Shown here piece after piece: positions 1 through 49,830 of a stretch of 64,000 bases of DNA. How positions within the stretch are numbered: position 1 is the stretch's first letter; the number at the start of each line of letters is the position of its first letter. The position numbers and the translations under genes were made by a program. The notes under the pieces are model-generated. The model was not told where the DNA came from and searched no databases. It worked only from the letters and a program-made list of their open reading frames with translations. The stretch is from the IMG/VR virus record IMGVR_UViG_3300044712_001255, positions 1-64,000 of that record; one strand, given 5' to 3'.

Positions 1-919
1 CAATGTTGATATGCTGGCGTGGTACGTTATCACGATCAAATTTCGGTAGAGCACTGGTTATTTGCGTCACATCAATCAACGGTGGATTGTCATAATCTTC
101 AAGCGAATACTCATATGGACATTGCTCGTTAAGCCCAATACCCCAGTCACGTACTATCTCCTTGGTGCCACCATCCAACGAGTGAATTACGGGTAAACCG
201 CAGGCAATTGCCTCAACTACCACGTTTGGACAGTGATCTAACCAAGCAAGGTGCAACATGTAATCAGCTTGACGATACATCTGTAAGCAAGCTTGATGAT
301 TCACATTTCCAGTGAAAAATACGTGTGGTTCACAATCTCTGATGTGACATTTCGTCGGAGAAGAACCCATAACGATCAAACAACTACGTGGATAGAAACT
401 TCTACGTAAGTGAGCAAACATTTCGTAGTTTGATCGAAGACGTTTTTGATTGTGCCAATTTGACGATGCAACAAAAATCTTGTCGTATGATTGACGTATC
501 GGTGTCAAGTCTACAGTTGTCTGATTACGAGGCACCTTGAATACATTGTCAACTTCAAGAAGGTCAATACCATTTGAAATTACGACAAATGACTTTGATT
601 GTCCCCACCACTTGGTGACCTGTGTAGCATTGAATTGTGATTGGAAGATGACTACATTGGCACGATGGTAGGCTGCTTTGATACCCACGTTCTTGTGCAA
701 GAATTCGCGAGGGCTAAACCATACACCATCTAAACGTTGCGCAAATGGTTTTCGTGGGTCTGCTCGAGAAGTCGGCTCAATGAACGTAAGTGAAACGTCA
801 TAATCAACAAGATCTGCGATGACATGACCACGATTAGCTAAAGCTTTTGCTATCCTTCCACCAAACGTATTTGGACCAGAGCGAGACGTAAAGTCAATTC
901 CATCAAACAGAACTTTCAC
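1..919 (-). CDS. Glycosyltransferase, GT4-like (GT-B); partial, runs off the left end
   Basis: Not in ORF track. Manual translation from GTG at 919 (MKVLFDGIDFTSRSGPNTFGGRIAKAL...) is open to the window edge and contains DHCPNVVVEAIACGLPVI, the GT4 C-terminal Rossmann motif. Confidence 0.85.
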   Translation of the reverse strand, partial: MKVLFDGIDFTSRSGPNTFGGRIAKALANRGHVIADLVDYDVSLTFIEPTSRADPRKPFAQRLDGVWFSPREFLHKNVGIKAAYHRANVVIFQSQFNATQVTKWWGQSKSFVVISNGIDLLEVDNVFKVPRNQTTVDLTPIRQSYDKIFVASSNWHNQKRLRSNYEMFAHLRRSFYPRSCLIVMGSSPTKCHIRDCEPHVFFTGNVNHQACLQMYRQADYMLHLAWLDHCPNVVVEAIACGLPVIHSLDGGTKEIVRDWGIGLNEQCPYEYSLEDYDNPPLIDVTQITSALPKFDRDNVPRQHINI

Positions 920-922
920 AAC

Positions 923-1312
923 CTAGTTCCTCTTTTTAATTGCTGCAACGATCTCTGCGGCGACAGGCGTTCCACGTAAAAATAGAGCACAATGAGCAAG
1001 TTCCTTTGTGCTCATGTCACTAGTTTTGGGACGCTTGTCGAAGATATTTGGGTCAAGTGCTTCTTCTCGACCGTTGATGGTGACCATGTCATAATACGCT
1101 TGAGATACGTAATTTACGCCAACGTCTGTCATGTGAGCCTTCAACGCAGGCACAAGAATGACAATTTCCTGCACGGTGAGAAAGATTTTCTGATAGATCT
1201 CAATGCACGCTGCCTTGTCAAGTGAACGATCCTTGTCGACAAATTCCTCGCTCAGCCTATCTTTTAACATCGCAGCTACAAGCTTATGAATCTCTAATGA
1301 TCTATCAGTCAT
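923..1312 (-). CDS. Hypothetical protein
   Basis: ORF 923..1366; start moved to ATG 1312 (MTDRSL) because of a GAGGT SD and overlap with the upstream stop. Confidence 0.7.
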   Translation of the reverse strand: MTDRSLEIHKLVAAMLKDRLSEEFVDKDRSLDKAACIEIYQKIFLTVQEIVILVPALKAHMTDVGVNYVSQAYYDMVTINGREEALDPNIFDKRPKTSDMSTKELAHCALFLRGTPVAAEIVAAIKKRN

Positions 1313-2291
1313 TGCATACCTCTTTGATGTACTCACAATACAAGCGAATACTTTCCTTCCAATCAATCAACACAGAATTGTTTTGTATAGGCAAAGATCT
1401 CAAACAATTGGCTCTTTTGGCGCTTAGATCAATGTCTAGCAATTTCACAAGATGATCAAAATCATCATAAGTGTATGATGAATCATTCACAAATTCAACA
1501 GCACCACCACCATCCTTGTGTACGTAAACGGGCAACTGACACGCTAAAGCTTCAAGAATGTGATTAGGACCAGGATCGAAACGTGATGCTGACACATACG
1601 TGTCGTACTTCCCAAGTTCATCTCCCAAGCGTCGACCAGACAATGGCCCAATCACCTTAGTATTTTTGAAAGTGTTTCGATGACGACCAATGTACGTAAA
1701 CGTAAAATCATCTTGTCTTGACGCAACGAGACGATCAAGGGCATCGTAGATATCAAATCCCTTTAGCTCATTGTTTGACCAATGATGGGCTACGATATTA
1801 AGACGCTGTGTTTCTTGCGTCAAGCTTGCATCATTGATCTTCTCATTCAACTTGAAGATATCACGATCAACTCCATTGATGATTACAGAGTTTTGCTGAC
1901 ATTGCCACCTAGAACCATAATACGATCGCAGCCACCTACTGACCCACACAGTTGCGTCAACGTACTGAGACGCTTTGATCCAAACGTCATCCACCCCTCT
2001 AGTAGCTTTACGTGCATCATTCTCGTTGACTCGTAGAATCAACTTGAATTTTTCGCCTTGACTTTCCTGCAACATCTTGTAACCAATCAAACGACCAACG
2101 CCGAGACCGGTAGTTTGCTGATCATCGTCCAGCGCAATTACGAGCGCAGCATCAGGAGGCGTCATATGATCATCAGGTGGAACAATATGCACATCAAATT
2201 CCTCGGCATATCGATACAGGGCCTGCACAAACATATTGCCACCGCCCCAAGGACCACGAACTGGAGCGCGATTCACGTATAGATTGATCAC
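1305..2291 (-). CDS. Glycosyltransferase, GT4-like
   Basis: N-terminal GPWGGGNMFV; C-terminal YVSASRFDPGPNHILEALACQLPV and KGFD motifs. Confidence 0.88.
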   Translation of the reverse strand: MINLYVNRAPVRGPWGGGNMFVQALYRYAEEFDVHIVPPDDHMTPPDAALVIALDDDQQTTGLGVGRLIGYKMLQESQGEKFKLILRVNENDARKATRGVDDVWIKASQYVDATVWVSRWLRSYYGSRWQCQQNSVIINGVDRDIFKLNEKINDASLTQETQRLNIVAHHWSNNELKGFDIYDALDRLVASRQDDFTFTYIGRHRNTFKNTKVIGPLSGRRLGDELGKYDTYVSASRFDPGPNHILEALACQLPVYVHKDGGGAVEFVNDSSYTYDDFDHLVKLLDIDLSAKRANCLRSLPIQNNSVLIDWKESIRLYCEYIKEVCND

Positions 2292-2533
2292 TTGTCTTTT
2301 CCGTTGTTGATTAGCGTACCCACAGCGGATGCGCTATAGTCGATGTTTGATATAGAAACACGTAGATGCTCATGTACAGCTTGCAACGCAGAAGCAATTC
2401 GCATCGCTGCGTCTCGTTGTTCATCAAGTTTCTTGCGCAAAGAAGCAACCTCACCTTCAAGAACATTGATACGTTGTCGAAGGTTATCAGCTTCTGCCCA
2501 TGCTATTGCAAGGTGCTCATTGTTATCCGACAT
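2288..2533 (-). CDS. Small coiled-coil protein
   Basis: 81 aa with heptad pattern; overlaps both neighbouring genes. Confidence 0.7.
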   Translation of the reverse strand: MSDNNEHLAIAWAEADNLRQRINVLEGEVASLRKKLDEQRDAAMRIASALQAVHEHLRVSISNIDYSASAVGTLINNGKDK

Positions 2534-3263
2534 AACCTCTACCTCTCAAGAACTCTGCCTCTGAGCGCTGGAATTTTGCGTCTGACGTTTGATACGTCTC
2601 AGGCACGTCATCAATCGTATAATGATACATCACACGCGGTATGAACACACGTCGCTTAGCGCGATGTAGACATGGTAAGTAAATTGCTTGGTCACCTGCA
2701 CGGCGTATGTAGGCGCCGTCTTCACCTCTGAAGTTCTCATCATGAACTCCAGAAATTAGACTCTTACGAAATGTCTTTAAATGACTTGACACCCACGGAT
2801 GTTTGTATGGGTCAGCGCCTTCTTGCATTGGTGCGCTGATGTTCTTGTCAGAGAATCCCCATCGATGAGCTGTCCACGCTATATCACAGCCAGTCTGATT
2901 GTAATACTCATTGATGATGTAGAGCGCATCAAGGTCTGTCAGCCAATCATCAGCGTCTATGCGGCAGACGATATCATCTTCTTCACACTCTTTGATTCCA
3001 GAAAGTACGTTTGCAACTTCCCACAATTTTTCCGTATTGAAACGAAGACTAATACGCTTGCAGCCACTTTCTTTGAGGGACTTGAATCGTGTGACAATCC
3101 GAGAACATTCAATACGTTGGTCGTAGTCGGACATATCGTCAATCAATATCAACTTCCAATACGGATACGATTGCCCGACTAACGAATGCAACAATGTTGG
3201 CAACGTGGATGACGCGTTGTAACACGGCGCAATGAAAACAAATTGGTTATTTGTTGTCACCAC
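2523..3263 (-). CDS. Glycosyltransferase family 2 (GT-A)
   Basis: FIAPCYNA...LIDDMSD N-terminus and RIDADDWL DxD motif. Confidence 0.92.
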   Translation of the reverse strand: MVTTNNQFVFIAPCYNASSTLPTLLHSLVGQSYPYWKLILIDDMSDYDQRIECSRIVTRFKSLKESGCKRISLRFNTEKLWEVANVLSGIKECEEDDIVCRIDADDWLTDLDALYIINEYYNQTGCDIAWTAHRWGFSDKNISAPMQEGADPYKHPWVSSHLKTFRKSLISGVHDENFRGEDGAYIRRAGDQAIYLPCLHRAKRRVFIPRVMYHYTIDDVPETYQTSDAKFQRSEAEFLRGRGYVG

Positions 3264-3982
3264 TCTCCCTCAACGCCGGGGGCCGTGAGAAGCACCTGCC
3301 CGTAATCAATTTCATCATCTGATTTGCCTCGTTCATCAAGAAACATTCGCCTGTCCATGATGATGAGTTCCTTACTAGCAAACTCTATCTCATCGATCAA
3401 GCGTTTGCACTCAATATCTGGAGACGGGGGGTTGGTGTGATAGTCGTCAAATAAGACGAACTTCCAATTTCGATCCTTTACCAATTCCCAGTCGAGCTTT
3501 GTAGCTGCGTACGAATGATCACCATCAACGTACGCAAAATCTACGTTCAGATCCTTCAGCTCTCCAGCTAATACGTCGCCAGATTTACCGCGATAGAAGT
3601 TGATGTTCTTAAACCACTCGTGTGGAAAAATACCAGTCAACCCCTTGACGTATTCTTCACTAAGATTTGGATCGATTGTGTAGACTTTACCATCATCTCC
3701 ATTGTCAACCATTGCCTTGGCGGCACACATTGTGCCGTACCCACGACCAAAGCCGATCTCAAGGAAGCTCTTTAGCTTGAACTTTCTGATGAGATAATAG
3801 ATGAGAATTCCTCTTTCATAGTTGCTGCGATAGAACGCACCATACTTTGCGTAGTTGGGTTCATCTGGGCGGCGATTACGCTTTGCTGTAAATTCTGCTA
3901 TTGAGTCAAAGTCGCCCAACACAATAGAATCAAGCGCAACGTCAATTTGAACAAGCTTGTCTTTGATATTGATTCTCTTCAT
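3257..3982 (-). CDS. Class I SAM-dependent methyltransferase (Methyltransf_24-like)
   Basis: FLEIGFGRGYG motif I and FAYVDGDHSY. Start moved to ATG 3982 (TAATG overlap, GAGGAAG SD). Confidence 0.88.
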   Translation of the reverse strand: MKRINIKDKLVQIDVALDSIVLGDFDSIAEFTAKRNRRPDEPNYAKYGAFYRSNYERGILIYYLIRKFKLKSFLEIGFGRGYGTMCAAKAMVDNGDDGKVYTIDPNLSEEYVKGLTGIFPHEWFKNINFYRGKSGDVLAGELKDLNVDFAYVDGDHSYAATKLDWELVKDRNWKFVLFDDYHTNPPSPDIECKRLIDEIEFASKELIIMDRRMFLDERGKSDDEIDYGQVLLTAPGVEGEW

Positions 3983-5925
3983 TACTTCCTCACGATCTTG
4001 GGCTCTGACATTGCGATCTTGATGCTTGGCGTGTGTTGGCCTGTCCACTTGCTGTGGAACACATGACCACCGGTGAGCGCTGACAGAGAAATAGCCAACA
4101 TCTTAATCATTTCATCCGTGACATCTGCCCATGGCACACCGAAAAACATGTTATTCTCAGCGGTATCTGCTGATGACTTATTGTAGAGGTCGTTCCAATG
4201 ATTCTGCCAATAGTCTCGATATAAACGTATCTTCCGTTCCATGTCATACCAGCTGTAGTGGAAGACACTCGGTACATCACGAACAATCTGGTTCATCACT
4301 TCCTGGTACTTCTGCAATGCACCGTCCTGATTATTGAGCGCAGCTTGTCGCAGCCCCTCAAGTTCAGCGTTCCAAAATGTGATGTGTGGAATTGGATCAC
4401 CAGTTTCGGTGTGAATTAGATCACATCCGTCAGTTCCTGGGCGAGCGTAAAGTTCTCCCTTGTCATCTTGCGCACGTAACTGACGTGGAATACCGTGAGT
4501 GATATACGGCTTGTTACGTGTCAAACGCCACTTCCACGGAGTGACGTCGATTCGTACCTTGTCTGCGCTTCCCCAATACTCAACAACAGGGAGACATACG
4601 ACATCAATTCCTGACGTTATTGATCGGCAAACTTCCTTCACCTTTTCTACGTGATCTTCATGGACAATTTCATCGCTGTCCATTTGCCAACAAAATTCCT
4701 TTGTGCACATTTTGCGAGCTTCGGCTTTTTGCATCCCGTCAAAGATTGCATGTCGAGGCGCAGCCCAATCACGAGGAATTTGTTTCACTTTCAAACGTTC
4801 GATTACAGACCCGTCGATTTCGTTAAATCGTTGGTACCCAAGCGCCATTTGTTGTAGAACGCTCCACGTTCCGTCTGTTGATCCACCGTCTACGACGCAA
4901 ACCTCATCGCAAAACTGCAACATAGATTCAATACATTCACGAAATGGATATCCTTGTTGCTTGCAATTGTAAGTCGTTGTGTATCCAGAAATGCTGGGCA
5001 CGTAATCGATGATCTTCTTGATGCTGTTCCAAAAAAGACCTGGAGCTGCATAGAGATATTGTTCGATCTCCTCTAAGTTGTCTGTTGCAAACCACTCTTC
5101 ATCCTTGTGCTGAACGTAGTTGTTAAGCTGCAGCTGACAACCTAAAAGTTTTGCTTCGATGACAAGACGTGGACATGTGTCAGCGCCCATAGGTAAATAC
5201 ACGAGTCCTGTACACGCTGCCAGCGTTGCAAGTAATTCATTGTAAGGCTTGTTCCAAACGACTGTGGTAGGCTTGTCATTGTCCTTTGCCCACTGCATTG
5301 CTTGGGAATACCCCTTAATTGGAGAATTTGAGCCAAGTACTACCCACTCCGGCGAGCGTTCCTTCCCGGCTGAAAGTTCACGTAACACTTTAATCTTTGC
5401 AAGCGTCTCAGCAGAGAGCACTGAGCTCAAGACGATATTGTCTCGTTCTGCGAGAAACGGAAACATTGTATGATAGCGAGCCTGCTGAGCTTCTGACATC
5501 CAATAAAGAGCTTGGGCGCCTAAGAAGAACGCAGATACCATCTTTCCATGCATTTGGTTGTGGCAATCGCATGGAACTTGTTCTGCGGCGAAATGAATCT
5601 CAGGTGACCTGTACTTGCAATATTTGTAGTCATATTCAAGCACTGCGTACTTGATGTTTCCAACGATAGTTGGAATCAACTGCATATTCATCTGCGTCCA
5701 ATTGCCGAAGATCCAAAACTTTTGGTGTGCTTCCTGCAAAAGCTTGATTGTTAGGTCCTTTGAATGAAGCTTAAACACCTTGAAAGGTGAAGAATCGATC
5801 AAAGCCTGAGTTGTTAGTTCGGCACCACCCACGTAGTCTTCAACAAACATGTCTGATACAACGACAATGTCTGTGTCTTCTGGGATGCTGATAGAATCGA
5901 ATAGTTGCTGGGATATGTTGAACAC
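3982..5925 (-). CDS. Bifunctional GT4-like + GT2 glycosyltransferase fusion
   Basis: N-half: SDMFVEDYVGGAELT...DTCPRLVIEAKLLGC. C-half: GYTTTYN...VVDGGSTDGT...QMDSDEIV. Start set at GTG 5925 from promoter geometry; ORF track start is 5982. Confidence 0.85.
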   Translation of the reverse strand: MFNISQQLFDSISIPEDTDIVVVSDMFVEDYVGGAELTTQALIDSSPFKVFKLHSKDLTIKLLQEAHQKFWIFGNWTQMNMQLIPTIVGNIKYAVLEYDYKYCKYRSPEIHFAAEQVPCDCHNQMHGKMVSAFFLGAQALYWMSEAQQARYHTMFPFLAERDNIVLSSVLSAETLAKIKVLRELSAGKERSPEWVVLGSNSPIKGYSQAMQWAKDNDKPTTVVWNKPYNELLATLAACTGLVYLPMGADTCPRLVIEAKLLGCQLQLNNYVQHKDEEWFATDNLEEIEQYLYAAPGLFWNSIKKIIDYVPSISGYTTTYNCKQQGYPFRECIESMLQFCDEVCVVDGGSTDGTWSVLQQMALGYQRFNEIDGSVIERLKVKQIPRDWAAPRHAIFDGMQKAEARKMCTKEFCWQMDSDEIVHEDHVEKVKEVCRSITSGIDVVCLPVVEYWGSADKVRIDVTPWKWRLTRNKPYITHGIPRQLRAQDDKGELYARPGTDGCDLIHTETGDPIPHITFWNAELEGLRQAALNNQDGALQKYQEVMNQIVRDVPSVFHYSWYDMERKIRLYRDYWQNHWNDLYNKSSADTAENNMFFGVPWADVTDEMIKMLAISLSALTGGHVFHSKWTGQHTPSIKIAMSEPKIVRK

Positions 5926-5931
5926 GTTGCT

Positions 5932-5960
5932 ATCGTACACCGTGATGATGTTTGTGTTCA
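5932..5960 (-). promoter_or_regulatory. Sigma70-like promoter TGAACA-17-TACGAT, 6 nt upstream of GTG 5925 (predicted leaderless)
   Basis: Hexamers and spacing read directly; the -35 is identical to that of the primase promoter. Confidence 0.65.
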
Positions 5961-5995
5961 ACCCGCGTCGACGCGGTTTCATCTAGATTTAAATT

Positions 5996-6024
5996 TTGAC
6001 CATTTGCCTTGTCCAGAGTAGAAT
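5996..6024 (+). promoter_or_regulatory. Sigma70-like promoter TTGACC-17-TAGAAT
   Basis: Near-consensus hexamers with 17-nt spacer, upstream of the GroEL-like gene. Confidence 0.7.
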
Positions 6025-6072
6025 CTGATCTAGAGTCTCTTAAAGAGATTTTAAGCTTCTGCTGAGACACAA

Positions 6073-7314
6073 ATGTCAAATACTACTAATCTAGTTAATG
6101 TACTTGCGGACGTGTACGCGGGCGAGGAACTTTCATGCGCAAAACGCAAAGAATTACTTTCGTTATATGATCTCATTCAAGACAAATTGATGCTATCGCA
6201 TGGCGAAGTGTCAATCGCTCAGGGATCTTCATTTGATGTGAAGACTAATGATGCAATACACGCCAGACTGCGTGAAATGATCTTGTCATTTGCCACGAAT
6301 GCTGAGGTGATTGGCCCAGGATCATTTACACATGTGATAAAGAATGCTATTGAACAACGTGGAGATGTGTCTACGTGGAGAAATGCTATTGATGGTGGTG
6401 CCACACGGCCAACGTTACTTGACGTTGAATGGCTCATAAATGAGCTTAATCTTGGTAACCTTCGCCACGCATTTGAAGAAGCTGTCAACTTTGCAGGGTT
6501 TGCCGGCCGAATCAAAGTTGAACAAACATCACATCATTTACCGATTGTTGAAAAATCACGTGGGTATACGTTTGATGTCAACGTCAATTCTACGTTCATT
6601 GGAAAATTTCGTGATGTTCGAGTTGTTGCGATTGACGGATTTCTAGAACATGAGTCTGAGGTTCACGGTCTATTAGAGTCATCTCACAATGCAAAAGAAC
6701 CATTTCTGTTATTCATTCGTGGAATGTCGCAAGATGTGGAACACACAATTTCCGTGAATTGGCAACGTGGAACATTACGTGCTATTCCAATCATTGTTCC
6801 ATTCGATGTTGATGGGATCAACATGATAAATGACATTGCCGTGGTATGCGGTACTGATGTTATTTCTTCTCACAAAGGACAACTAATATCAGCTGTGAAA
6901 TATTCTGACCTTTCGTACGTACCTGAAGTTGATGTTTGGGCAAATAGAATCACGATAATAAATGCTGCAACTCGTGTAGCAGTGAACCTACAAATACAAG
7001 AACTTAGACGTAAGCGTTCTGACGTCAAAGATGAATTGACTTCACTTTATGATAAGCGTATAAAGTCACTGTCGCCTGGACTCGTGACGATCAAAATACC
7101 AGATGGTGTTATGTTTCGCTGTAATCGACAACGAGTGGATTTTGCATTACGAGCGTACAGAAGCCTGGTGAATCACGGCACTGTGATCGTGAATGACGAA
7201 AAAATGTTGCTTGACACAGCGGTGGCAGTGACAACATATGCTCCAAAGTTAGTCGCAGCGCTAGATGATCTTGGTGCAGTGATTAACGTTTGTGCTTCTC
7301 AGGCTTCACAGTAG
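6073..7314 (+). CDS. Degenerate GroEL/chaperonin-60-like protein
   Basis: Apical-domain match (EPFLLFIRGMSQDVEHTISVNWQRGTL...INDIAVVCGTDVIS) and KRIKSLSPGLVTIKI...RVDFALRAYRSLVNHG. ATP motifs are degenerate and the protein is only 413 aa. Confidence 0.8.
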   Translation: MSNTTNLVNVLADVYAGEELSCAKRKELLSLYDLIQDKLMLSHGEVSIAQGSSFDVKTNDAIHARLREMILSFATNAEVIGPGSFTHVIKNAIEQRGDVSTWRNAIDGGATRPTLLDVEWLINELNLGNLRHAFEEAVNFAGFAGRIKVEQTSHHLPIVEKSRGYTFDVNVNSTFIGKFRDVRVVAIDGFLEHESEVHGLLESSHNAKEPFLLFIRGMSQDVEHTISVNWQRGTLRAIPIIVPFDVDGINMINDIAVVCGTDVISSHKGQLISAVKYSDLSYVPEVDVWANRITIINAATRVAVNLQIQELRRKRSDVKDELTSLYDKRIKSLSPGLVTIKIPDGVMFRCNRQRVDFALRAYRSLVNHGTVIVNDEKMLLDTAVAVTTYAPKLVAALDDLGAVINVCASQASQ

Positions 7315-8534: not shown

Positions 8535-8996
8535 ATGGCGAACGGCATTAAGCATTTGATTAGATGCAGGTGTGTCCTGCCTCAGTTCAAGAACTCAAAT
8601 TCTCCCCCGCAGCATCGGTTCATTGTGTTTTCTGTAGTAAATGATGATGATTCTGTTGTGCCAAAGTTTGCGCAATGCAACAACTGCGGAATCATTCACA
8701 AGGTCATAGACGTTTGTCGCTCAGAGTTTACGACAAAAGAAGATATGACATCATTAAAAACGATCGAAGATGTTAAAGCTTCGATTCCTGAGAAGGCTGC
8801 GTTAGCCCTTGAACGTCACAGAGCTGATTTAGCTACGTGGGAAGCCGTGCAATTCATTATAGAAAATAAAAAGTGGGGTGAAGTGGTTGTATTGTCAACT
8901 GACGAGGCAGAAGGCTTGCGACAGGGGAAATACATTCACATTCTTGGCGAAAGCTTGTTTAAGATAGAATCTTTCGCATCGGAGTACGCAATATGA
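8535..8996 (+). CDS. Hypothetical protein, putative zinc-binding
   Basis: CRC...CNNCG...C cysteine pattern. Confidence 0.7.
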   Translation: MANGIKHLIRCRCVLPQFKNSNSPPQHRFIVFSVVNDDDSVVPKFAQCNNCGIIHKVIDVCRSEFTTKEDMTSLKTIEDVKASIPEKAALALERHRADLATWEAVQFIIENKKWGEVVVLSTDEAEGLRQGKYIHILGESLFKIESFASEYAI

Positions 8997-9235
8997 ACAT
9001 TGGTGAGTTTTCTTCCGAGCGTGATGCAAAGGAAAATCTAACGGCTCGGCAAATTGTGCAAGAGGTTTTGAACTTTGGTGTGAATGACAGGATGATTTTG
9101 CTGATCATACACCAACTAGCGCTTAATCTCGAGAACGTCGAGCACATGAAAGCAGTCGCTCGAGCTGTGGCAGGACTACAAAGCAACGTGTTTCTGATGG
9201 ATCGAACAGATGACGGAGAACTAAAAGATGGGTAG
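8993..9235 (+). CDS. Hypothetical protein
   Basis: ATGA overlap coupling with the upstream gene. Confidence 0.7.
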   Translation: MNIGEFSSERDAKENLTARQIVQEVLNFGVNDRMILLIIHQLALNLENVEHMKAVARAVAGLQSNVFLMDRTDDGELKDG

Positions 9236-9821
9236 AATTGTCGTAAAATCACAGGCAGGTGTTACACGTCCGAGAATGGCGACAACTATCAAGTTGCCAT
9301 TGATGGCTGGGAATTCTGAATCTAGGCTGGTGTATTTGACTGGAGATGTGACAGAAGAATCTATAGCTGAAGTACAGCGTACCATCTTAGATCTTTCGAC
9401 TCACAGCAAGCAGCCAATTCATCTTGTCGTATCCACATACGGTGGCGCCGTGCATGAAATGTTCTCATTGTATGATGTGATGAAGTTTGTGCCATGTCCC
9501 ATTCACACAGTTGCACTTGGTAAGGTGATGTCTGCTGGTAGCCTAATTTTTGCTGCTGGTGAAAAGGGCAATAGGTTGATTGGTGCGTCAACAAGGGTGA
9601 TGATTCACGCATTGTCGGCTGGATTCTATGGCAATTACTTTGAACTTCTAAACAGCGTTGATGAAGTGAAGGAATTGCAGAGGATGTATGTTGAGCGTTT
9701 GGCAAGGGAGACAAAGATGTCTCCAAAGAAGATTGAAGACTTGCTGAACTCAAAACTCGACATGACGATAACGCCAAAGCAAGCAGTTGAACTTGGTATC
9801 GCAGATCGCATCATTGAGTAA
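9228..9821 (+). CDS. clpP: ClpP protease proteolytic subunit
   Basis: RLVYLTGDV, STYGGAV, GKVMSAGS (Ser), VMIH (His), LDMTITPKQAVELGIAD (Asp); catalytic triad intact. Confidence 0.93.
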   Translation: MGRIVVKSQAGVTRPRMATTIKLPLMAGNSESRLVYLTGDVTEESIAEVQRTILDLSTHSKQPIHLVVSTYGGAVHEMFSLYDVMKFVPCPIHTVALGKVMSAGSLIFAAGEKGNRLIGASTRVMIHALSAGFYGNYFELLNSVDEVKELQRMYVERLARETKMSPKKIEDLLNSKLDMTITPKQAVELGIADRIIE

Positions 9822-36286: not shown

Positions 36287-39200
36287 ATGACAAAAAAGAA
36301 AGAAGACGCATCGCTGTTTCAACGTTTGACTCGCCTGTTTCGTTCAGGTGGCAAACTACGTCGTAAGGTAAAGACGTCTGATACGTTGCAAGCGGTGCCA
36401 GATAAGACAAAGTCGTCTGGCGTTCTTCTTTTTCAAAAGTCGATGTCTCCGACGTATGCGACTGTAACAAGCAACGCATACAATCTTTCTGAACGCCTGA
36501 TGCGATATCAGGATTTTCAAGAGATGGAATACACCGCTGAATTAGCATCAGCGCTTGACATATACGCTGATGAGTCTGTTCCACAAGATGACAAGGGACG
36601 CGTTCTTCACATCCATTCAGAGAACGAGAAAATCAAAGAGATTCTTGAGGACTTGTTCTACAATGTGTTGAACATCAGTTTTAACGGGCGTCCATGGGTA
36701 AGAAATCTTTGTAAGTACGGATGCTTCTTTTTGTATCTTGACGTATCGCCAGAATATGGCGTGATGAATGCTTTCCCAATCCCGGTGAACGAGATTGAGC
36801 GTGAGGAAAATTACGATAGAGAAGATCCGTTCGCTGTAAGATTTCGTTGGGTGACGCTTGGCAACAAGACGTTAGAGAATTGGGAAGTTGCTCACTTTAG
36901 GCTTTTGGGCAATGACATGTTCTTGCCTTACGGCTCTTCTGTTTTGGAACCAGCTCGACGCATTTGGCGACAGCTAATTCTTGCTGAGGACGCGATGCTT
37001 GTGTATCGTGTCGTAAGAGCTCCAGAACGTCGAGTATTCTACATTGACGTTGGTAATATCCCGGCAGACGAAGTTGATGCTTACATGGAGAAGCAGAAAA
37101 CACAGCTTCGTTCCAGCAGCGTTGTTGAGAACACCACCGGAAAACAAGATCTGCGGTACAACCCCATGCCGGTGCATAAAGATACACCCGTACCATTATT
37201 GGATGGTCGTACGGTGACGATAGAAAACTTAGCGCAAGAAATATCAGAGAACCCAAATAATGATGTGTGGGTTTATTCTGTGAATGACAGTGATCATAGA
37301 ATTGTTCCCGGTAGAGTTATATGGTGTGGTAAGAACTACTCCGCAGAAAAACTCATAAAAGTATGGTTAGATAACGACAGTTATGTCACGACTGCGCCTG
37401 AGCATCCATTTGTAATGCGTGACGGGTCAAATAAGAGAGCAGACGAACTTGTCGTGAATGACAGTTTAATGCCATTCTATCGTATAGAAACTAATAACGG
37501 GTATGAAGAAATTTATGACCCTCGTAGCAATGCATACGTCAAAACTCATAAAGTTGTTGCTAGTAATGTTTTAGTTGAGGAGTGGAATAACACAGAACAT
37601 AAGGTTGTTCATCACAAACATCCTGAGATCATTGGGAATAAGAGAAATAATCATCCAGATAATTTGCAAGTGATGTCATTTTGGGATCATCGAAGGTGGC
37701 ATATTGATAGATTACCATTGACATTACACAGACCTGATGTTTTACAAAAGACGCGTGAACGTTTGACGGCATGGAATAAGAGCTCGATAAAGAAACAACG
37801 TGTTTCTGAACTGAATAAGGAACGTAATTCTGTTGTAGCTATGGCAGGCTATAATGGAAGTGAGCTTCATAAATCACATAATGAAAATCGTCGTCAAGGC
37901 CAGAAGCGATCATGGGCAACAAATAAACAACAACGTTCACAAACTATGAAATGGATCATACCCGATGAATTTTTTGTCATCGGCGCACAGAAATTGCGTG
38001 AAGATCCTACGCTTAATAGACAAAGATTTCATGCTACAATGATGGCTGATTCTAATGTGATACGTTTGCTTAGAAGGGCGCAAATTACTAAGCGTGACGT
38101 CAATAAGATGTCAGAGGCAGCGTGGATTCGTCAATTACAAGAAAACACCGGCGCAACGTTTGGCACATTTAAGAGAACGACATTGGGCGATGCGTATGTT
38201 GCTCGCAAAAATCATAAAGTTTCACGAGTTGAGCATCTTGATGTGCAAGGTGAAGACGTCTATTGCATGACAGTTGTTGGACCAAACGGAGAAAATGACA
38301 GACACAACTTTGCAGTTTGTGGTTTGACGCCTTCAACTGATGGATCAACAAATGTAACGCAAGTAGATGGAATTATTCTTAAAAACTCAATTGAAGAGGA
38401 CTACTTCATAGCTGTTCGTGGCGGTGATACTGGCACAAAGATTGATACTCTCGCCGGCGGGCAAAATGCTGCCGCCGTTGAAGACGTCGAGTACATTCAG
38501 AAGAAGATGATTGCTGCTATCAAGATTCCACGTGCGTATCTTGGATATGATGACATGCTTTCGTCAAAGGCAACGCTGGCGCAAGAGGACATTCGTTTTG
38601 CGCGTACCATCAATTCAATTCAAAAGACCGTTGTTGCTGAGTTCAATAAGATCGCAATCATTCACCTATTTTCACATGGATATGATGGCGAAGATTTGAT
38701 GAACTTTACGCTAAGGCTGACCAACCCTTCGTCAATCGCAGAACAACAGAAGCTTGAGCTTTGGCGCGCAAGATTCGATATTGCTGGCACGGCGCCAGAT
38801 GGTATGCTATCAAAGCGCTGGATTGGAAAGACAATTCTCAACCTCACGGATTCTGAAATTCGTGAGATTCGCGAGGACATAGTCGCTGAAGGAGGAGAAG
38901 CTGAAGCCGGTGGCGGCGGAGGTGGAGGAGGCGGCGGTGGAGGGGGTCTGTTTGGTGGTGGAGGTGACCTTGGTGGTGGCGAAGGCGAAGCCGGTGGTGA
39001 AGAAGCCGCAGGCGGTGAAGAAGCAGCGCCAGAAGAAACAGAAGAGACTGAGGGCGATGTTCTCAAATCATCTGAAGATCACTCAGGTACGCCTATAAAG
39101 GTGACTGCTCGCGTAAAGTTACCGTCCGATAACGGATACGCAGGTACTGGAACGTATCAAAATTCTTCTGATATTTCCTCATCGAGATCTCAGCCCACAG

Positions 39201-39592
39201 ACGCAAAGAGCAAGCGTCATTCCAATTACGTCAATCGTGAAAAGAAAGGCCCAGAAGGTGGGTATCGAGATTTTGAAGGTGTTATATCTGCCCAACAAAA
39301 GGTGGGAGATCATACAGATATGAACTCTTTCAAAACATTGTTTGGCACGAAGGTATCTCGTCGTTATGGCGAATCAGTTGAACAGCCAGAGCGTACTATG
39401 TTGGCGATGGCACCTGATATGATTTCCTTATTTGAAAAGATGTCTCATGTCGGATTCGGTCGCAAGAAGGCGACGTTACGTCAAGGTGTCAATAGTGACA
39501 TCATCAGAGACAGCGTTGATATCCAAGATGAGATTGACGCAGGCGCAGGAGTCTTGTTAGAGGACCTAGATATTGTTGAGAACGAGGACTAA
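36287..39592 (+). CDS. Portal protein (T4 gp20-like) with an intein and a Gly/Glu-rich C-terminal extension
   Basis: ASALDIYADE, VAHFRLLG, PYGSSVLE, RAPERRVFYIDVGNIP, EEDYFIAVRGG...IDTLAGG, FARTINSIQ. Confidence 0.95.
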   Translation: MTKKKEDASLFQRLTRLFRSGGKLRRKVKTSDTLQAVPDKTKSSGVLLFQKSMSPTYATVTSNAYNLSERLMRYQDFQEMEYTAELASALDIYADESVPQDDKGRVLHIHSENEKIKEILEDLFYNVLNISFNGRPWVRNLCKYGCFFLYLDVSPEYGVMNAFPIPVNEIEREENYDREDPFAVRFRWVTLGNKTLENWEVAHFRLLGNDMFLPYGSSVLEPARRIWRQLILAEDAMLVYRVVRAPERRVFYIDVGNIPADEVDAYMEKQKTQLRSSSVVENTTGKQDLRYNPMPVHKDTPVPLLDGRTVTIENLAQEISENPNNDVWVYSVNDSDHRIVPGRVIWCGKNYSAEKLIKVWLDNDSYVTTAPEHPFVMRDGSNKRADELVVNDSLMPFYRIETNNGYEEIYDPRSNAYVKTHKVVASNVLVEEWNNTEHKVVHHKHPEIIGNKRNNHPDNLQVMSFWDHRRWHIDRLPLTLHRPDVLQKTRERLTAWNKSSIKKQRVSELNKERNSVVAMAGYNGSELHKSHNENRRQGQKRSWATNKQQRSQTMKWIIPDEFFVIGAQKLREDPTLNRQRFHATMMADSNVIRLLRRAQITKRDVNKMSEAAWIRQLQENTGATFGTFKRTTLGDAYVARKNHKVSRVEHLDVQGEDVYCMTVVGPNGENDRHNFAVCGLTPSTDGSTNVTQVDGIILKNSIEEDYFIAVRGGDTGTKIDTLAGGQNAAAVEDVEYIQKKMIAAIKIPRAYLGYDDMLSSKATLAQEDIRFARTINSIQKTVVAEFNKIAIIHLFSHGYDGEDLMNFTLRLTNPSSIAEQQKLELWRARFDIAGTAPDGMLSKRWIGKTILNLTDSEIREIREDIVAEGGEAEAGGGGGGGGGGGGGLFGGGGDLGGGEGEAGGEEAAGGEEAAPEETEETEGDVLKSSEDHSGTPIKVTARVKLPSDNGYAGTGTYQNSSDISSSRSQPTDAKSKRHSNYVNREKKGPEGGYRDFEGVISAQQKVGDHTDMNSFKTLFGTKVSRRYGESVEQPERTMLAMAPDMISLFEKMSHVGFGRKKATLRQGVNSDIIRDSVDIQDEIDAGAGVLLEDLDIVENED
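37169..38386 (+). mobile_element. Intein (406 aa) with HNH homing endonuclease and atypical Pro1
   Basis: Interrupts portal YNPM|SIEEDYF. Block A PVHKDTPVPLLDG, block B TAPEHPF, HNH VVHHKH...GNKRNNHPDNL, block F VYCMTV...HNF, block G ILKN|S. Confidence 0.93.
38888..39054 (+). repeat. Poly-Gly (13 Gly) and GGE(E/A) low-complexity tract in the portal
   Basis: Mixed GGN codons, so protein-level low complexity rather than a DNA microsatellite. Confidence 0.85.
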
Positions 39593-49472: not shown

Positions 49473-49830
49473 GGGACCGACAGGATTCGACGGAGGTAAT
49501 AACTAAACAATTGCACGCAGGCGGTGCTCGCGTCCGCCTCAAACAATGTGAGCAAACGTTCAGTTGCAAACGACAACGCAACAGTTCTTCGGGCTGCGGC
49601 TTGAGAACCGATCCTAAGATGAGATAGTTCTTGTAATCTGTGGATCGTCAACCCACCAGAGCTTGGCCAAGCGGTAATTGTGTGATAGGCCGATGGCGAG
49701 AAAAATACACACAGGCCTCCTTTGGCAGCACAAAGGAACTCACCCGTCAGGGATATGATGGGCAAGCGTGTGAATGAAATTGAATAGAGAAGACTTGCGG
49801 ACGGTGGTTCAAATCCACCCGGTTCCACTA
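49473..49830 (+). ncRNA. ssrA: tmRNA (transfer-messenger RNA), tag ANDNATVLRAAA
   Basis: 5' GGGACCG pairs with 3' CGGTTCC-A including the G3-U wobble; GGATTCGAC D-loop mimic; T arm GGTGG-TTCAAAT-CCACC; pk1 GCAC/GTGC with AGGCG/CGCCT; tag ORF 49566-49604. Confidence 0.97.

What the first reader, a model, noticed from the sequence alone, without database searches (positions are those of the whole stretch)
1..5925. Phage glycan-building operon: four GT genes (five GT domains) plus a methyltransferase
Seen: a tightly packed minus-strand operon with two GT4-like genes, one GT2, a GT4-GT2 fusion and a Methyltransf_24-like gene under one promoter; it may continue leftwards. Established: some mycobacteriophages glycosylate virion proteins, chloroviruses build O-methylated capsid glycans with their own GTs and methyltransferases, and T-even phages glucosylate DNA. 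Inference: this many linkage-forming domains plus a methyltransferase suggests an oligosaccharide, possibly methyl-capped, on the virion or host surface rather than single-sugar DNA modification.
Basis: partly seen in the sequence, partly recalled or inferred. Interest (0 to 1): 0.6.

Follow-up and report, generated by a model that had tools for sequence, protein, structure and literature searches.

The report
Jumbo-phage glycan-building gene island
A 324-kb T4-like soil phage carries a large set of soluble enzymes that make unusual activated sugars and link them into a complex, probably methylated glycan, most likely to coat its own particle rather than to modify its DNA, for which it has a separate small gene module.

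Summary
Window 1-5982 contains seven overlapping minus-strand genes: a GT-B+GT-A fusion of 666 aa, an O-methyltransferase, a GT2, two GT1/GT4 genes and two small unknown ORFs.

It is only the first third of the unit. The window starts at base 1 of a 324,468-bp phage contig. Synteny in more than 10 related phage contigs shows the operon runs on at the contig's other end: GDP-mannose 4,6-dehydratase, GT1, a GT2-like gene, PseB/PseC/PseH-like enzymes and a UDP-sugar dehydrogenase. Further on lie a second GT-B pair, a late sigma factor and baseplate/fibre genes. That makes about nine GT domains, none with a membrane segment.

The stated refutation test is partly triggered, because the genome does encode a cytosine hydroxymethylase. 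However, it lies about 136 kb away, in its own conserved module with a cryptic GT-B and a sugar 4-epimerase. A cultured relative with a homologous GT pair has DNA without sugar-modified bases.

Best reading: cytoplasmic assembly of a complex, O-methylated hetero-glycan on a non-DNA acceptor, most likely virion proteins (confidence about 0.45). Modification of a host-envelope glycan and elongation of a DNA glycan remain open. The fusion enzyme family is phage-specific, widespread and uncharacterised.

The parts
3982..5982 (-). Gene A: 666-aa bifunctional glycosyltransferase. aa 35-327 form a GT-B (GT4-like) domain with a conserved Cys/His cluster (C122, H130, C138, C140). aa 330-666 form a GT-A (GT2) domain with DGGSTD and DSDE (DXD) motifs and a Trp-rich C-terminal part. 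It is the first gene of the operon and the conserved anchor of the locus.
   Evidence: Pfam GT2. AF2 model pLDDT 90.9. Foldseek and VIA. Invariant residues. More than 2293 homologs at 55-66% identity, all metagenomic. No homolog in cultured phages. In bacterial genome collections found only on MAG contigs.
3257..3982 (-). Gene B: class I SAM-dependent, cation-dependent-type O-methyltransferase (Methyltransf_24 / Methyltransf_3). The likely start is ATG at 3982, which overlaps the stop codon of A by one base. The mechanical ORF extends to 4048.
   Evidence: Homologs in 18 of 34 related loci at the same position.
2523..3263 (-). Gene C: GT2 (GT-A) glycosyltransferase, 246 aa.
   Evidence: Pfam 53 bits. 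Homologs in 26 of 34 related loci at about 61% identity.
2288..2533 (-). Gene D: 81-aa ORF of unknown function. A small ORF occupies the same position in relative L003.
   Evidence: No detectable homolog in related loci by tblastn.
1305..2291 (-). Gene E: probable GT-B (GT1/GT4-like) glycosyltransferase, 328 aa.
   Evidence: Pfam 25-26 bits, just below the cut-off. PHROG glycosyltransferase 1e-10. Homologs in 20 loci.
923..1312 (-). Gene F: conserved small protein (about 129 aa from ATG 1312; the mechanical ORF extends to 1366), function unknown. It always lies just upstream of gene G.
   Evidence: Homologs in 18 loci at about 38% identity. No family hit.
1..919 (-). Gene G: GT4 (GT-B) glycosyltransferase. 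The contig end cuts off its C-terminus; about 20-25 aa are missing.
   Evidence: Pfam 60.5 bits. No stop before base 1. In relatives it is followed within about 100 bp by gmd, which is the first gene at the other end of this contig.
5983..6072 (.). 90-bp divergent intergenic region between gene A and a GroEL-like gene (6073-7314, +). This is the presumed promoter region of the operon; no promoter could be identified.

Best explanation
Extent of the unit. Window 1-5982 is the head of a co-directional operon of about 15 kb, inside a glycan island of about 22 kb, in a roughly 324-kb T4-like jumbo phage from a rhizosphere metagenome. The operon crosses the break between the two contig ends.

Step 1, precursor supply. 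Soluble phage enzymes make activated sugars:
- Gmd gives GDP-4-keto-6-deoxymannose and derived 6-deoxyhexoses.
- PseB/PseC/PseH-like enzymes probably give a UDP-2,4-diacetamido-2,4,6-trideoxyhexose.
- An NDP-sugar dehydrogenase-like enzyme may supply a uronic acid.

Step 2, assembly. About seven GT domains in the operon, plus a conserved GT-B pair further downstream, link these sugars in the cytoplasm into a hetero-oligosaccharide or short polymer. The O-methyltransferase methylates it. The invariant two-domain enzyme A (a retaining-type GT-B fused to a GT-A) is the conserved core step. It either primes the acceptor or adds a disaccharide unit. The genes after it vary between relatives and diversify the glycan.

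Step 3, acceptor. The most likely acceptor is a virion protein. Candidates are the Ser/Thr-rich hypervariable insertion of the major capsid protein, or baseplate and fibre proteins. This would resemble capsid and tail glycosylation in mycobacteriophages and the self-encoded glycosylation machinery of chloroviruses and mimiviruses. DNA glycosylation is assigned to a separate three-gene module (GT-B, 4-epimerase, dCMP hydroxymethylase) 136 kb away.

Shown versus inferred. Shown here: gene content, folds, synteny, absence of membrane proteins, and the separate hydroxymethylase module. Inferred: the sugar identities, methylation of the glycan, and the acceptor.
For: 1. Continuity across the contig ends. 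The order A-MT-GT2-GT1-F-GT4-gmd-GT1-J-PseB-PseC-PseH-O is found in L005, L006, L008, L010, L015, L036 and others. In this genome the second half lies at C1:324433-315552.

2. Precursor enzymes. Gmd scores 441 bits against a cut-off of 415. PseB-like scores 251, PseC-like 205 and PseH-like 73 bits. The NDP-sugar dehydrogenase scores 184 bits. There is no NeuB, so no nonulosonic acid is made.

3. GT census. Five GT1 and two GT2 Pfam hits, all inside this island. Added to these are the GT-B half of A and the GT2-like J (a lead only).

4. Solubility. No cluster protein has a predicted membrane segment, and the genome has no Wzx/Wzy-like polytopic proteins. Most of the GTs are acidic (A has pI 5.8).

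5. A separate DNA module. The 429-aa ORF at C1:136314-137603 is a GT-B (AF2 pLDDT 94.3; MshA 3c4q at E 1e-13; the Atlas hits include a DNA alpha-glucosyltransferase cluster). It lies next to a GalE/TviC-like SDR and the only ThyA-family gene of the genome. That gene's best PDB matches are MilA (141 bits) and T4 dCMP hydroxymethylase, not thymidylate synthases. The module is syntenic in complete relatives, which carry a T4-gp42-type hydroxymethylase instead (252 bits). Published DNA-glycosylating phages likewise place the first GT next to the ThyA homolog (PMC13326640).

6. A cultured relative. Flavobacterium phage immuto has the homologous PD-(D/E)XK nuclease - GT - GT block, followed by further glycan genes. 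LC-MS of its virion DNA showed canonical dA, dC and dT, with only dG replaced by a deazaguanine (bioRxiv 10.1101/2023.04.13.536721).

7. Neighbourhood. The island runs, on the same strand, into a gp55-like late sigma factor and baseplate and fibre genes.

8. Candidate acceptor. The major capsid protein has a Ser/Thr-rich insertion that is 16-38% invariant, against 56-84% for the core.
Against: - No direct evidence identifies any acceptor.
- Timing of expression could not be inferred. No late-promoter motif was found.
- The clade almost certainly makes 5-hydroxymethylcytosine. In RB69 and RL38J1 the second and third DNA glycosyltransferases are encoded far from the ThyA homolog, so distance does not exclude a DNA role.
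- The published DNA GTs give the same generic structural hits (6kih, BshA, MshA, BGluT) as the GT-B half of A.
- The immuto argument covers only the downstream GT pair and an aminotransferase, at 30-34% identity. It does not cover genes A to G.
- GTs that act on undecaprenyl-linked intermediates are also soluble, so the lack of membrane proteins does not exclude a host-envelope glycan.
- The PseB/C/H-like scores are below the equivalog cut-offs, and the dehydrogenase lacks its C-terminal domain.
Confidence: 0.45

Rival explanations
1. Host-envelope remodelling. The soluble phage GTs and sugar-nucleotide enzymes act on the host's undecaprenyl-linked O-antigen, capsule or S-layer glycan intermediates during infection. 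This changes the cell surface, for example to block superinfection or to stop progeny adsorbing to debris. Export relies on host machinery.
For: - The gene content (Gmd, amino-sugar pathway, many GT4 and GT2 genes, a methyltransferase) is that of O-antigen or capsule loci.
- Structural neighbours include PglA, WaaG, WbnH, TarS and the K4CP polymerase, which act on lipid- or polymer-linked acceptors.
- The gene set varies between relatives as serotype loci do.
- Cyanomyoviruses are known to carry LPS-type genes (my own knowledge, not tested here).
Against: - The phage encodes no initiating phosphoglycosyl transferase, flippase, polymerase, ligase or ABC transporter, and the island has no membrane protein.
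- Enzyme A is a conserved core gene found only in phage contigs and has no cellular counterpart. That is unexpected for an enzyme that has to fit varied host pathways.
- The island is contiguous with late and structural genes.
Confidence: 0.22
2. DNA hyper-glycosylation. The hydroxymethylase module installs 5hmC and a first sugar. GTs of the large operon then extend it into a longer, methylated oligosaccharide on DNA, which protects the genome from restriction and CRISPR.
For: - The genome and all three near-complete relatives encode a cytosine-type hydroxymethylase with D169 and D177 in E. coli ThyA numbering.
- Phage DNA is known to carry mono- to tri-saccharides built by GT-A and GT-B enzymes recruited from LPS or teichoic-acid families (10.1101/2023.12.21.572611; PMC13326640).
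- Elongating DNA GTs can be encoded far from the ThyA homolog.
- All other recognisable GTs of the genome are in this island.
Against: - A dedicated GT-B and epimerase already sit with the hydroxymethylase, and that module is conserved independently.
- The operon lies 136 kb away, among late and structural genes.
- About 151,000 cytosines each carrying a 5-9-sugar glycan would roughly double the packaged mass (my estimate from 324 kb at 46.6% GC).
- Sugars of the diacetamido-trideoxyhexose or GDP-deoxyhexose type, and O-methylation, are not reported on DNA in the papers read.
- Most of the GTs are acidic.
- Immuto, which has the homologous GT pair, has unglycosylated DNA.
Confidence: 0.15
3. 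Soluble or non-covalently attached product. The enzymes make a free or lipid-anchored methylated polysaccharide, comparable to mycobacterial polymethylated polysaccharides or chlorovirus-induced hyaluronan. This would be a polymerase-type product of the bifunctional enzyme A, used inside the cell or as an extracellular matrix.
For: - The GT-B+GT-A layout of A resembles that of bifunctional polymerases such as EXT1/EXT2, and A also gives whole-length matches to LARGE1 and K4CP.
- A dehydrogenase-like gene is present that could supply a uronic acid.
- All the enzymes are soluble.
Against: - The whole-length matches have TM of only about 0.2, so they reflect domain composition and not a shared architecture.
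- The dehydrogenase is truncated.
- The many additional single GTs fit a defined hetero-oligosaccharide better than a repeating disaccharide.
- No export function is encoded.
Confidence: 0.08

Closest known systems
[quoted passage not shown] A similar GT pair occurs in Microcystis phage Mel-JY01 and Rhodothermus phage RM378.
   Same: - These are the closest cultured relatives by capsid protein (37-47% identity).
- They share the PD-(D/E)XK nuclease - GT-B - GT-B block (30-33% identity), followed by a GT2, sugar aminotransferases, a methyltransferase and an NDP-sugar epimerase.
- A GroEL-like gene lies nearby in both.
   Different: - Immuto has no homolog of enzyme A or of genes B to G.
- Immuto modifies guanine (fdPreQ1) and keeps canonical dC. 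The present clade encodes a dCMP hydroxymethylase and no TGT/DpdA.
- No function has been shown for the immuto island either.
Virion glycosylation of mycobacteriophages (Che8, Corndog, Myrna; Freeman et al. 2023, cited in PMC12619734)
   Same: Phage-encoded soluble GTs act in the cytoplasm and decorate capsid and tail-tube subunits. This is the mechanism proposed here.
   Different: - Those operons are small, with a few GTs and no nucleotide-sugar pathway as far as I recall (the paper is not held).
- Here there are about nine GT domains plus three precursor pathways.
- Homology was not tested, and no acceptor has been shown here.
Self-encoded glycosylation machinery of giant viruses: chlorovirus PBCV-1 (multi-domain GT/methyltransferase A064R, GMD) and mimivirus fibril glycosylation clusters (from my own knowledge)
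   Same: - A virus-encoded Gmd.
- Sugar aminotransferase and N-acetyltransferase steps.
- Multi-domain GTs.
- O-methylation of the glycan.
- Cytoplasmic assembly on capsid or fibre proteins, independent of host secretory systems.
   Different: - Those hosts are eukaryotic.
- Only generic GT fold similarity was seen. The best BFVD matches are giant-virus multi-GT proteins at TM no higher than about 0.34.
- Here the methyltransferase is a separate gene and not a domain.
Phage DNA cytosine glycosylation clusters: T4 alpha/beta-GT, RB69/DLP3 arabinosyl-5hoC, RL38J1 hexosyl-5hoC, and 5mYOX-linked GT clusters (PMC13326640; 10.1101/2023.12.21.572611)
   Same: - The genome has a ThyA-homolog pyrimidine-modifying enzyme with an adjacent GT-B and a sugar-nucleotide enzyme.
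- The GT-B folds give the same PDB neighbours (MshA, 6kih, BshA).
   Different: - That description fits the separate 136-143 kb module, not the operon in the finding.
- The active-site signature is D169/D177 (hydroxymethylase type), not the D169N of 5-hydroxy-dCMP synthases.
- Known DNA glycans have three sugars or fewer.
Bifunctional GT-B+GT-A glycan polymerases (exostosins EXT1/EXT2)
   Same: The same order of an N-terminal GT-B and a C-terminal GT-A domain in one chain. Whole-length Foldseek matches reach E about 2e-7.
   Different: - TM is only about 0.2, so the relative domain arrangement is not shared.
- There is no sequence similarity.
- Polymerase activity is untested.

Membership tests
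CAZy-type GT-B retaining glycosyltransferases (GT4-like) | Two Rossmann-like domains (GT-B fold) with a Glycos_transf_1-type C-terminal domain | tested here: met
   - Gene G: Pfam PF00534, 60.5 bits.
- N-half of A: VIA Z 17-20 to 6kih, HepE, BshA, PglA and MshA over aa 35-327.
- Gene E: 25-26 bits only, just below the cut-off, with PHROG 1e-10. For E this is probable, not certain.
- No CAZy/dbCAN assignment was run.
GT2 (GT-A inverting glycosyltransferases) | GT-A fold with a nucleotide-binding motif and a DXD motif | tested here: met
   - Gene C: PF00535, 53 bits.
- Gene A, aa 336-451: 34 bits. Invariant D365-G-G-S-x-D370 and D435-x-D437-E438 across 50 homologs. GT-A matches to SunS, K4CP and TarS.
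Pseudaminic acid pathway (PseB, C, H, G, I, F) | All six enzymes present, including the nonulosonate synthase PseI (NeuB family) and the CMP-transferase PseF | tested here: not met
   - The PseB-, PseC- and PseH-like genes score 251, 205 and 73 bits. All are below the equivalog cut-offs of 408, 424 and 93.
- No NeuB family gene occurs anywhere in the genome.
- PseF and PseG were not searched genome-wide. No such family was hit among the island's ORFs.
- The pathway probably stops at a UDP-2,4-diacetamido-2,4,6-trideoxyhexose.
GDP-mannose 4,6-dehydratase (Gmd) | Score above the TIGR01472 equivalog cut-off over the full length | tested here: met
   441.4 bits against a cut-off of 415, model positions 1-340 of 342. 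The gene is at C1:323438-324433, outside the window.
Bacterial O-antigen or capsule loci (Wzx/Wzy- or ABC-dependent) | An initiating phosphoglycosyl transferase plus a flippase/polymerase or ABC transporter encoded with the GTs | tested here: not met
   - No predicted membrane segment in any island protein.
- Only four proteins in the whole genome have three or more hydrophobic segments, and none is in the island (a crude hydropathy scan).
- Family-specific searches (Bac_transf, Glycos_transf_4, Wzy) were not run.
Phage DNA base glycosylation clusters | A GT encoded next to the enzyme that creates the reactive base (ThyA homolog or 5mYOX) | tested here: not met
   - The only ThyA-family gene is at C1:141897-142898, about 136 kb from the operon.
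- The feature is met instead by a different gene, the 429-aa GT-B at C1:136314-137603.
Phage DNA base glycosylation clusters | Sugar-bearing nucleosides in virion DNA | not testable with these tools
   This needs nucleoside LC-MS. The only related datum is that immuto phage DNA shows canonical dC, dA and dT.
Virus-encoded virion glycosylation systems (mycobacteriophage, chlorovirus and mimivirus type) | Virus-encoded soluble GTs, with or without nucleotide-sugar enzymes, that need no host secretory pathway | tested here: met
Virus-encoded virion glycosylation systems (mycobacteriophage, chlorovirus and mimivirus type) | Glycan demonstrated on a structural protein | not testable with these tools
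   Only suggestive evidence is available: the Ser/Thr-rich hypervariable insertion in the major capsid protein and adjacency to baseplate and fibre genes.

The most novel reading that the evidence does not exclude
The large operon extends the sugar placed on 5-hydroxymethylcytosine by the separate GT-B/epimerase/hydroxymethylase module. The result would be a methylated hetero-oligosaccharide containing deoxyhexose and diacetamido-trideoxyhexose, by far the most complex DNA glycan known, in a widespread clade of soil and aquatic jumbo phages.
Probability: 0.12. Interest if true: 0.9.

Novelty: new variant of a known kind. Interest (0 to 1): 0.6.

Why it matters
If the glycan coats the virion, tailed phages of bacteria, and not only giant eukaryotic viruses and a few mycobacteriophages, would carry complete and autonomous glycosylation factories with their own nucleotide-sugar supply.

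Such a coat would affect particle stability in soil, adsorption, and recognition by hosts, grazers and immune systems. It would also bear on the design of phage-based products.

Enzyme A defines a large, phage-only family of bifunctional glycosyltransferases (more than 2000 sequence clusters) with no studied member.

The same genomes also carry a compact, previously unannotated candidate module for 5hmC glycosylation. The clade is therefore a natural system in which virion glycosylation and DNA glycosylation can be told apart experimentally.

Tried and rejected
- Megablast of window 1-6000, and tblastn of enzyme A, against 50,697 phage records found no match.
- Simply joining the two contig ends gives an in-frame read-through of GT4 into gmd with no stop. 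Some sequence is therefore missing, and the ends share no terminal overlap. Logan's independent contig of the source run starts at window base 28, so it does not bridge the break.
- Promoter and timing analysis led nowhere. Sigma-70-like sites are at chance level. T4's TATAAATA occurs once in the genome. A k-mer enrichment upstream of 185 genes gave no motif. An inspection by eye of the 120 nt upstream of gene A in 22 loci gave no shared motif.
- A true pseudaminic-acid pathway is rejected because there is no NeuB. A 7-deazaguanine DNA modification like that of immuto is rejected because there is no TGT/DpdA.
- A 5-hydroxy-dCMP synthase of the RB69 type is rejected for the ThyA homolog. It has Asp and not Asn at the diagnostic position 169 (this rests on my reading of the printed alignment and my recollection of the E. 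coli motif).
- PDB sequence searches of the unknown ORFs L, O and P and of the GT2 gene C gave nothing.
- The three roughly 180-aa paralogs next to the hydroxymethylase are not P-loop kinases. They look like Ntn hydrolases.
- The bacterial genome collection holds enzyme A only on short MAG contigs, which are probably mis-binned phage. This gave no host or functional context.
- I could not establish whether this clade equals the published 'moraphages', which have four core GT orthogroups (PMC12619734).
- The paper by Freeman et al. 2023 is not held.
- Complex prediction and the large representative-protein search were not used, because no binding claim or absence claim depended on them.

Full report
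**1. What is in the window**

The window is bases 1-64000 of a single 324,468-bp IMG/VR virus contig (linear; CheckV completeness 86%; 46.6% GC). The only public run that holds it fully is a rhizosphere metagenome.

It is a distant T4-like jumbo phage. The major head protein is gp23-like. The best cultured matches are Microcystis phage Mel-JY01 (37% identity) and Flavobacterium phage immuto (47% over part of the protein). Portal, SbcCD, PhoH and helicase genes are also present.

Bases 1-5982 carry seven minus-strand ORFs that overlap by 1-11 nt or are 3 nt apart:

| Gene | Coordinates | Assignment |
|---|---|---|
| A | 3982-5982 | 666 aa, GT-B + GT-A fusion |
| B | 3257-3982 | Methyltransf_24 / Methyltransf_3 |
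| C | 2523-3263 | GT2 |
| D | 2288-2533 | 81 aa, unknown |
| E | 1305-2291 | probable GT1 |
| F | 923-1312 | conserved, unknown |
| G | 1-919 | GT4, C-terminus cut by the contig end |

**2. Enzyme A**

Pfam sees only the GT2 part. An AlphaFold2 model built on 50 homologs (pLDDT 90.9) shows two domains:
- aa 35-327 form a GT-B fold. It matches GT4 enzymes at Z 17-20 (sucrose-phosphate synthase 6kih, HepE, BshA, PglA, MshA).
- aa 330-666 form a GT-A fold. The nearest structures are the glycocin S-glycosyltransferases SunS and ThuS, chondroitin polymerase K4CP, and TarS.

The GT-A nucleotide and DXD motifs are invariant, as are a Cys/His cluster in the GT-B half and many Trp residues in the C-terminal part.

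The family has more than 2293 members at 55-66% identity. All are from metagenomes, on contigs of up to 351 kb. There are none in 50,697 phage records. In 185,579 bacterial and archaeal genomes it appears only on six MAG contigs, and in two of those the halves occur as separate genes. Enzyme A is a phage-specific core enzyme.

**3. The operon is three times longer than the finding**

The other end of the contig is also a minus-strand block. Its first genes, in order, are:
- Gmd (441 bits, cut-off 415)
- a GT1
- a 272-aa protein, J, which the ESM Atlas places with GT2 (score 0.96; a lead only)
- a PseB-like 4,6-dehydratase
- a 263-aa unknown ORF
- a PseC-like aminotransferase
- a PseH-like N-acetyltransferase
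- two unknown ORFs
- a 324-aa NDP-sugar dehydrogenase that lacks its C-terminal domain

In 33 related IMG/VR loci and one JGI contig the order A-B-C-E-F-G-gmd-GT1-J-PseB-PseC-PseH-O is contiguous, with G followed by gmd within about 100 bp. The two contig ends are therefore neighbours. Joining them directly gives a read-through without a stop, so roughly 0.1-0.2 kb is missing. An independent assembly of the same run also breaks there.

Downstream on the same strand lie:
- DUF7487, phosphatase, PTH2, PanD and PD-(D/E)XK nuclease genes
- a second GT-B pair (Y, 414 aa; Z, 385 aa)
- a gp55-like late sigma factor
- gp25- and gp6-like baseplate proteins
- very large fibre-like proteins

All Pfam GT1 and GT2 hits of the genome fall inside this island of about 22 kb. 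Enzyme A is present in every related locus, while the genes after it fall into at least three different arrangements.

**4. The DNA-modification question**

The genome has one ThyA-family gene, at C1:141897-142898.

Its best solved relatives are CMP hydroxymethylase MilA (141 bits) and T4 dCMP hydroxymethylase (61 bits). Thymidylate synthases score 50 bits or less. Its motif MRSSDLVLGIANDI puts Asp at positions 169 and 177 in E. coli numbering. That is the cytosine-hydroxymethylase pattern. It is not the D169N signature of the 5-hydroxy-dCMP synthases of RB69 and DLP3 (PMC13326640).

The near-complete relatives G001 and G002 (and G003, a weaker hit with an in-frame TGA that I did not characterise) have a ThyA-family gene at the corresponding place. 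In G001 and G002 it is a T4-gp42-type enzyme (252 bits for G002). The clade very probably makes 5hmC DNA.

This gene is about 136 kb from the operon and has its own partners:
- A 429-aa ORF without any Pfam or NCBIfam hit is a GT-B enzyme. Its AF2 model has pLDDT 94.3. The top Foldseek match is MshA 3c4q at E 1e-13 and TM about 0.7, followed by 6kih and BshA. The Atlas feature hits include a DNA alpha-glucosyltransferase cluster.
- A GalE/TviC-like 4-epimerase-type SDR lies beside it.

The order GT-B - SDR - hydroxymethylase - (Ntn-hydrolase-like paralogs) - thymidine kinase - dCMP deaminase is conserved in G001 and G002. This is the layout of published DNA-glycosylation clusters, in which the first GT, with the same PDB neighbours, sits beside the ThyA homolog. 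The DNA function therefore has a dedicated candidate, and the operon in the finding does not cluster with it.

**5. Evidence from a cultured relative**

The Y-Z pair, preceded by a PD-(D/E)XK nuclease, is conserved as an adjacent pair in Flavobacterium phage immuto and Microcystis phage Mel-JY01. Rhodothermus phage RM378 and an uncultured 484-kb phage carry a homolog of Y only.

In immuto the pair is followed by a GT2, sugar aminotransferases, a methyltransferase, a mannosyltransferase, an acetyltransferase and an epimerase. Only the nuclease, Y, Z and the aminotransferase are detectably homologous to the genes here.

LC-UV-MS/MS of immuto virion DNA showed canonical dA, dC and dT, with complete replacement of dG by a formylated deazaguanine (10.1101/2023.04.13.536721). 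A related glycan island thus exists in a phage whose DNA carries no sugars.

**6. Acceptor and mechanism**

No island protein has a predicted membrane segment. The genome has no Wzx/Wzy-like proteins, no NeuB and no TGT. Glycan assembly is therefore cytoplasmic and uses soluble enzymes.

Taken together, the following favour a complex glycan on a non-DNA acceptor, most plausibly virion proteins:
- three precursor pathways
- about nine GT domains
- an O-methyltransferase of the cation-dependent class
- variable downstream gene content behind an invariant first enzyme
- position next to late and structural genes
- the separate DNA module

A candidate acceptor is the major capsid protein. It has a Ser/Thr-rich insertion (aa about 150-350) that is 16-38% invariant among five relatives, against 56-84% for the core. 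This is inference only.

I put virion glycosylation at about 0.45, host-envelope glycan remodelling at about 0.22, DNA glycan elongation at about 0.15 and a free polymer at about 0.08. DNA elongation cannot be dismissed. In RB69 and RL38J1 the elongating DNA GTs lie far from the ThyA homolog, and they give the same generic fold matches. Phage DNA glycans of up to three sugars are documented.

**7. Novelty**

Virus-encoded glycosylation machinery is known from mycobacteriophages, chloroviruses and mimiviruses, and cyanophages carry LPS-type genes.

What is new here:
- the scale (about nine GT domains plus precursor synthesis in a tailed phage)
- the uncharacterised, widespread, phage-only bifunctional enzyme A
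- its coexistence with a compact, unannotated candidate 5hmC-glycosylation module

A 2025 survey of another aquatic jumbo-phage lineage noted four core GT orthogroups without resolving their role (PMC12619734). I could not tell whether that is the same lineage. I rate this a new variant of a known kind, with interest 0.6.

Read laying was given 3000 letters. Only genetic code 11 was used.

Noticed in passing
G000:C1:136314-144600 (outside the window; locus L037:2315-10577): A conserved module: cryptic 429-aa GT-B (no Pfam hit), DUF7487, GalE/TviC-like SDR, cytosine-type pyrimidine hydroxymethylase, thymidine kinase and dCMP deaminase. It is a candidate 5hmC DNA-glycosylation unit. The hydroxymethylase is MilA-like here but T4-gp42-like at the same place in relatives G001 and G002, which is a non-orthologous replacement.
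   Followed up: yes
window 49473-49828 (+): A phage-encoded tmRNA gene with tag peptide ANDNATVLRAAA (ARAGORN).
   Followed up: no
window 36287-39592 (+): The portal protein ORF is unusually long (1101 aa) and contains an HNH-endonuclease-like stretch at aa 400-474. This may be an intein or homing-endonuclease insertion.
   Followed up: no
window 44829-46736 (+): The major capsid protein lies in a locally GC-rich stretch (55% against about 44%). It has a Ser/Thr/Gly-rich insertion (aa about 150-350) that is hypervariable among relatives, making it a possible surface-exposed glycosylation target.
   Followed up: partly
G000:C1:314794-315555, 310801-311724 and 137600-138625; also L003:17334-18287 and L033:10499-11032: Three DUF7487 hits in this genome, one of them below the Pfam cut-off. 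Copies sit at different positions inside the glycan island in different relatives, which suggests a mobile (homing-type) gene.
   Followed up: no
G000:C1:139738-140860 and 142834-143502 (L037:5739-6861, 8835-9503): Three paralogous proteins of about 180-220 aa carrying the motif MTC(I/V)(I/V)G at or near the N-terminus. A relative's homolog gives a weak Proteasome Pfam hit. They look like Ntn hydrolases and flank the hydroxymethylase in all three genomes compared.
   Followed up: partly
G000:C1:315552-316526: The NDP-sugar dehydrogenase-like gene is only 324 aa and lacks the C-terminal UDP-binding domain. The same short form (327 aa) is found in relative L003, so it is a conserved truncation and not a break.
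   Followed up: partly
G000:C1:312592-314597: Aspartate decarboxylase (PanD), peptidyl-tRNA hydrolase PTH2 and a dual-specificity phosphatase lie between the two GT blocks of the island.
   Followed up: no
window 6073-7314 (+): A GroEL-like 413-aa gene is transcribed divergently from gene A. The adjacency is conserved in 20 related loci, and a GroEL gene also lies near the glycan island of Flavobacterium phage immuto.
   Followed up: partly
L048:5633-6475 and L049:8001-8894: On MAG contigs labelled Pelagibacter and Bdellovibrionales, only the N-terminal GT-B half or only the C-terminal GT-A half of enzyme A was matched (40-43% identity). The fusion may therefore have arisen from, or split into, separate genes; whether they are stand-alone ORFs was not checked.
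   Followed up: no
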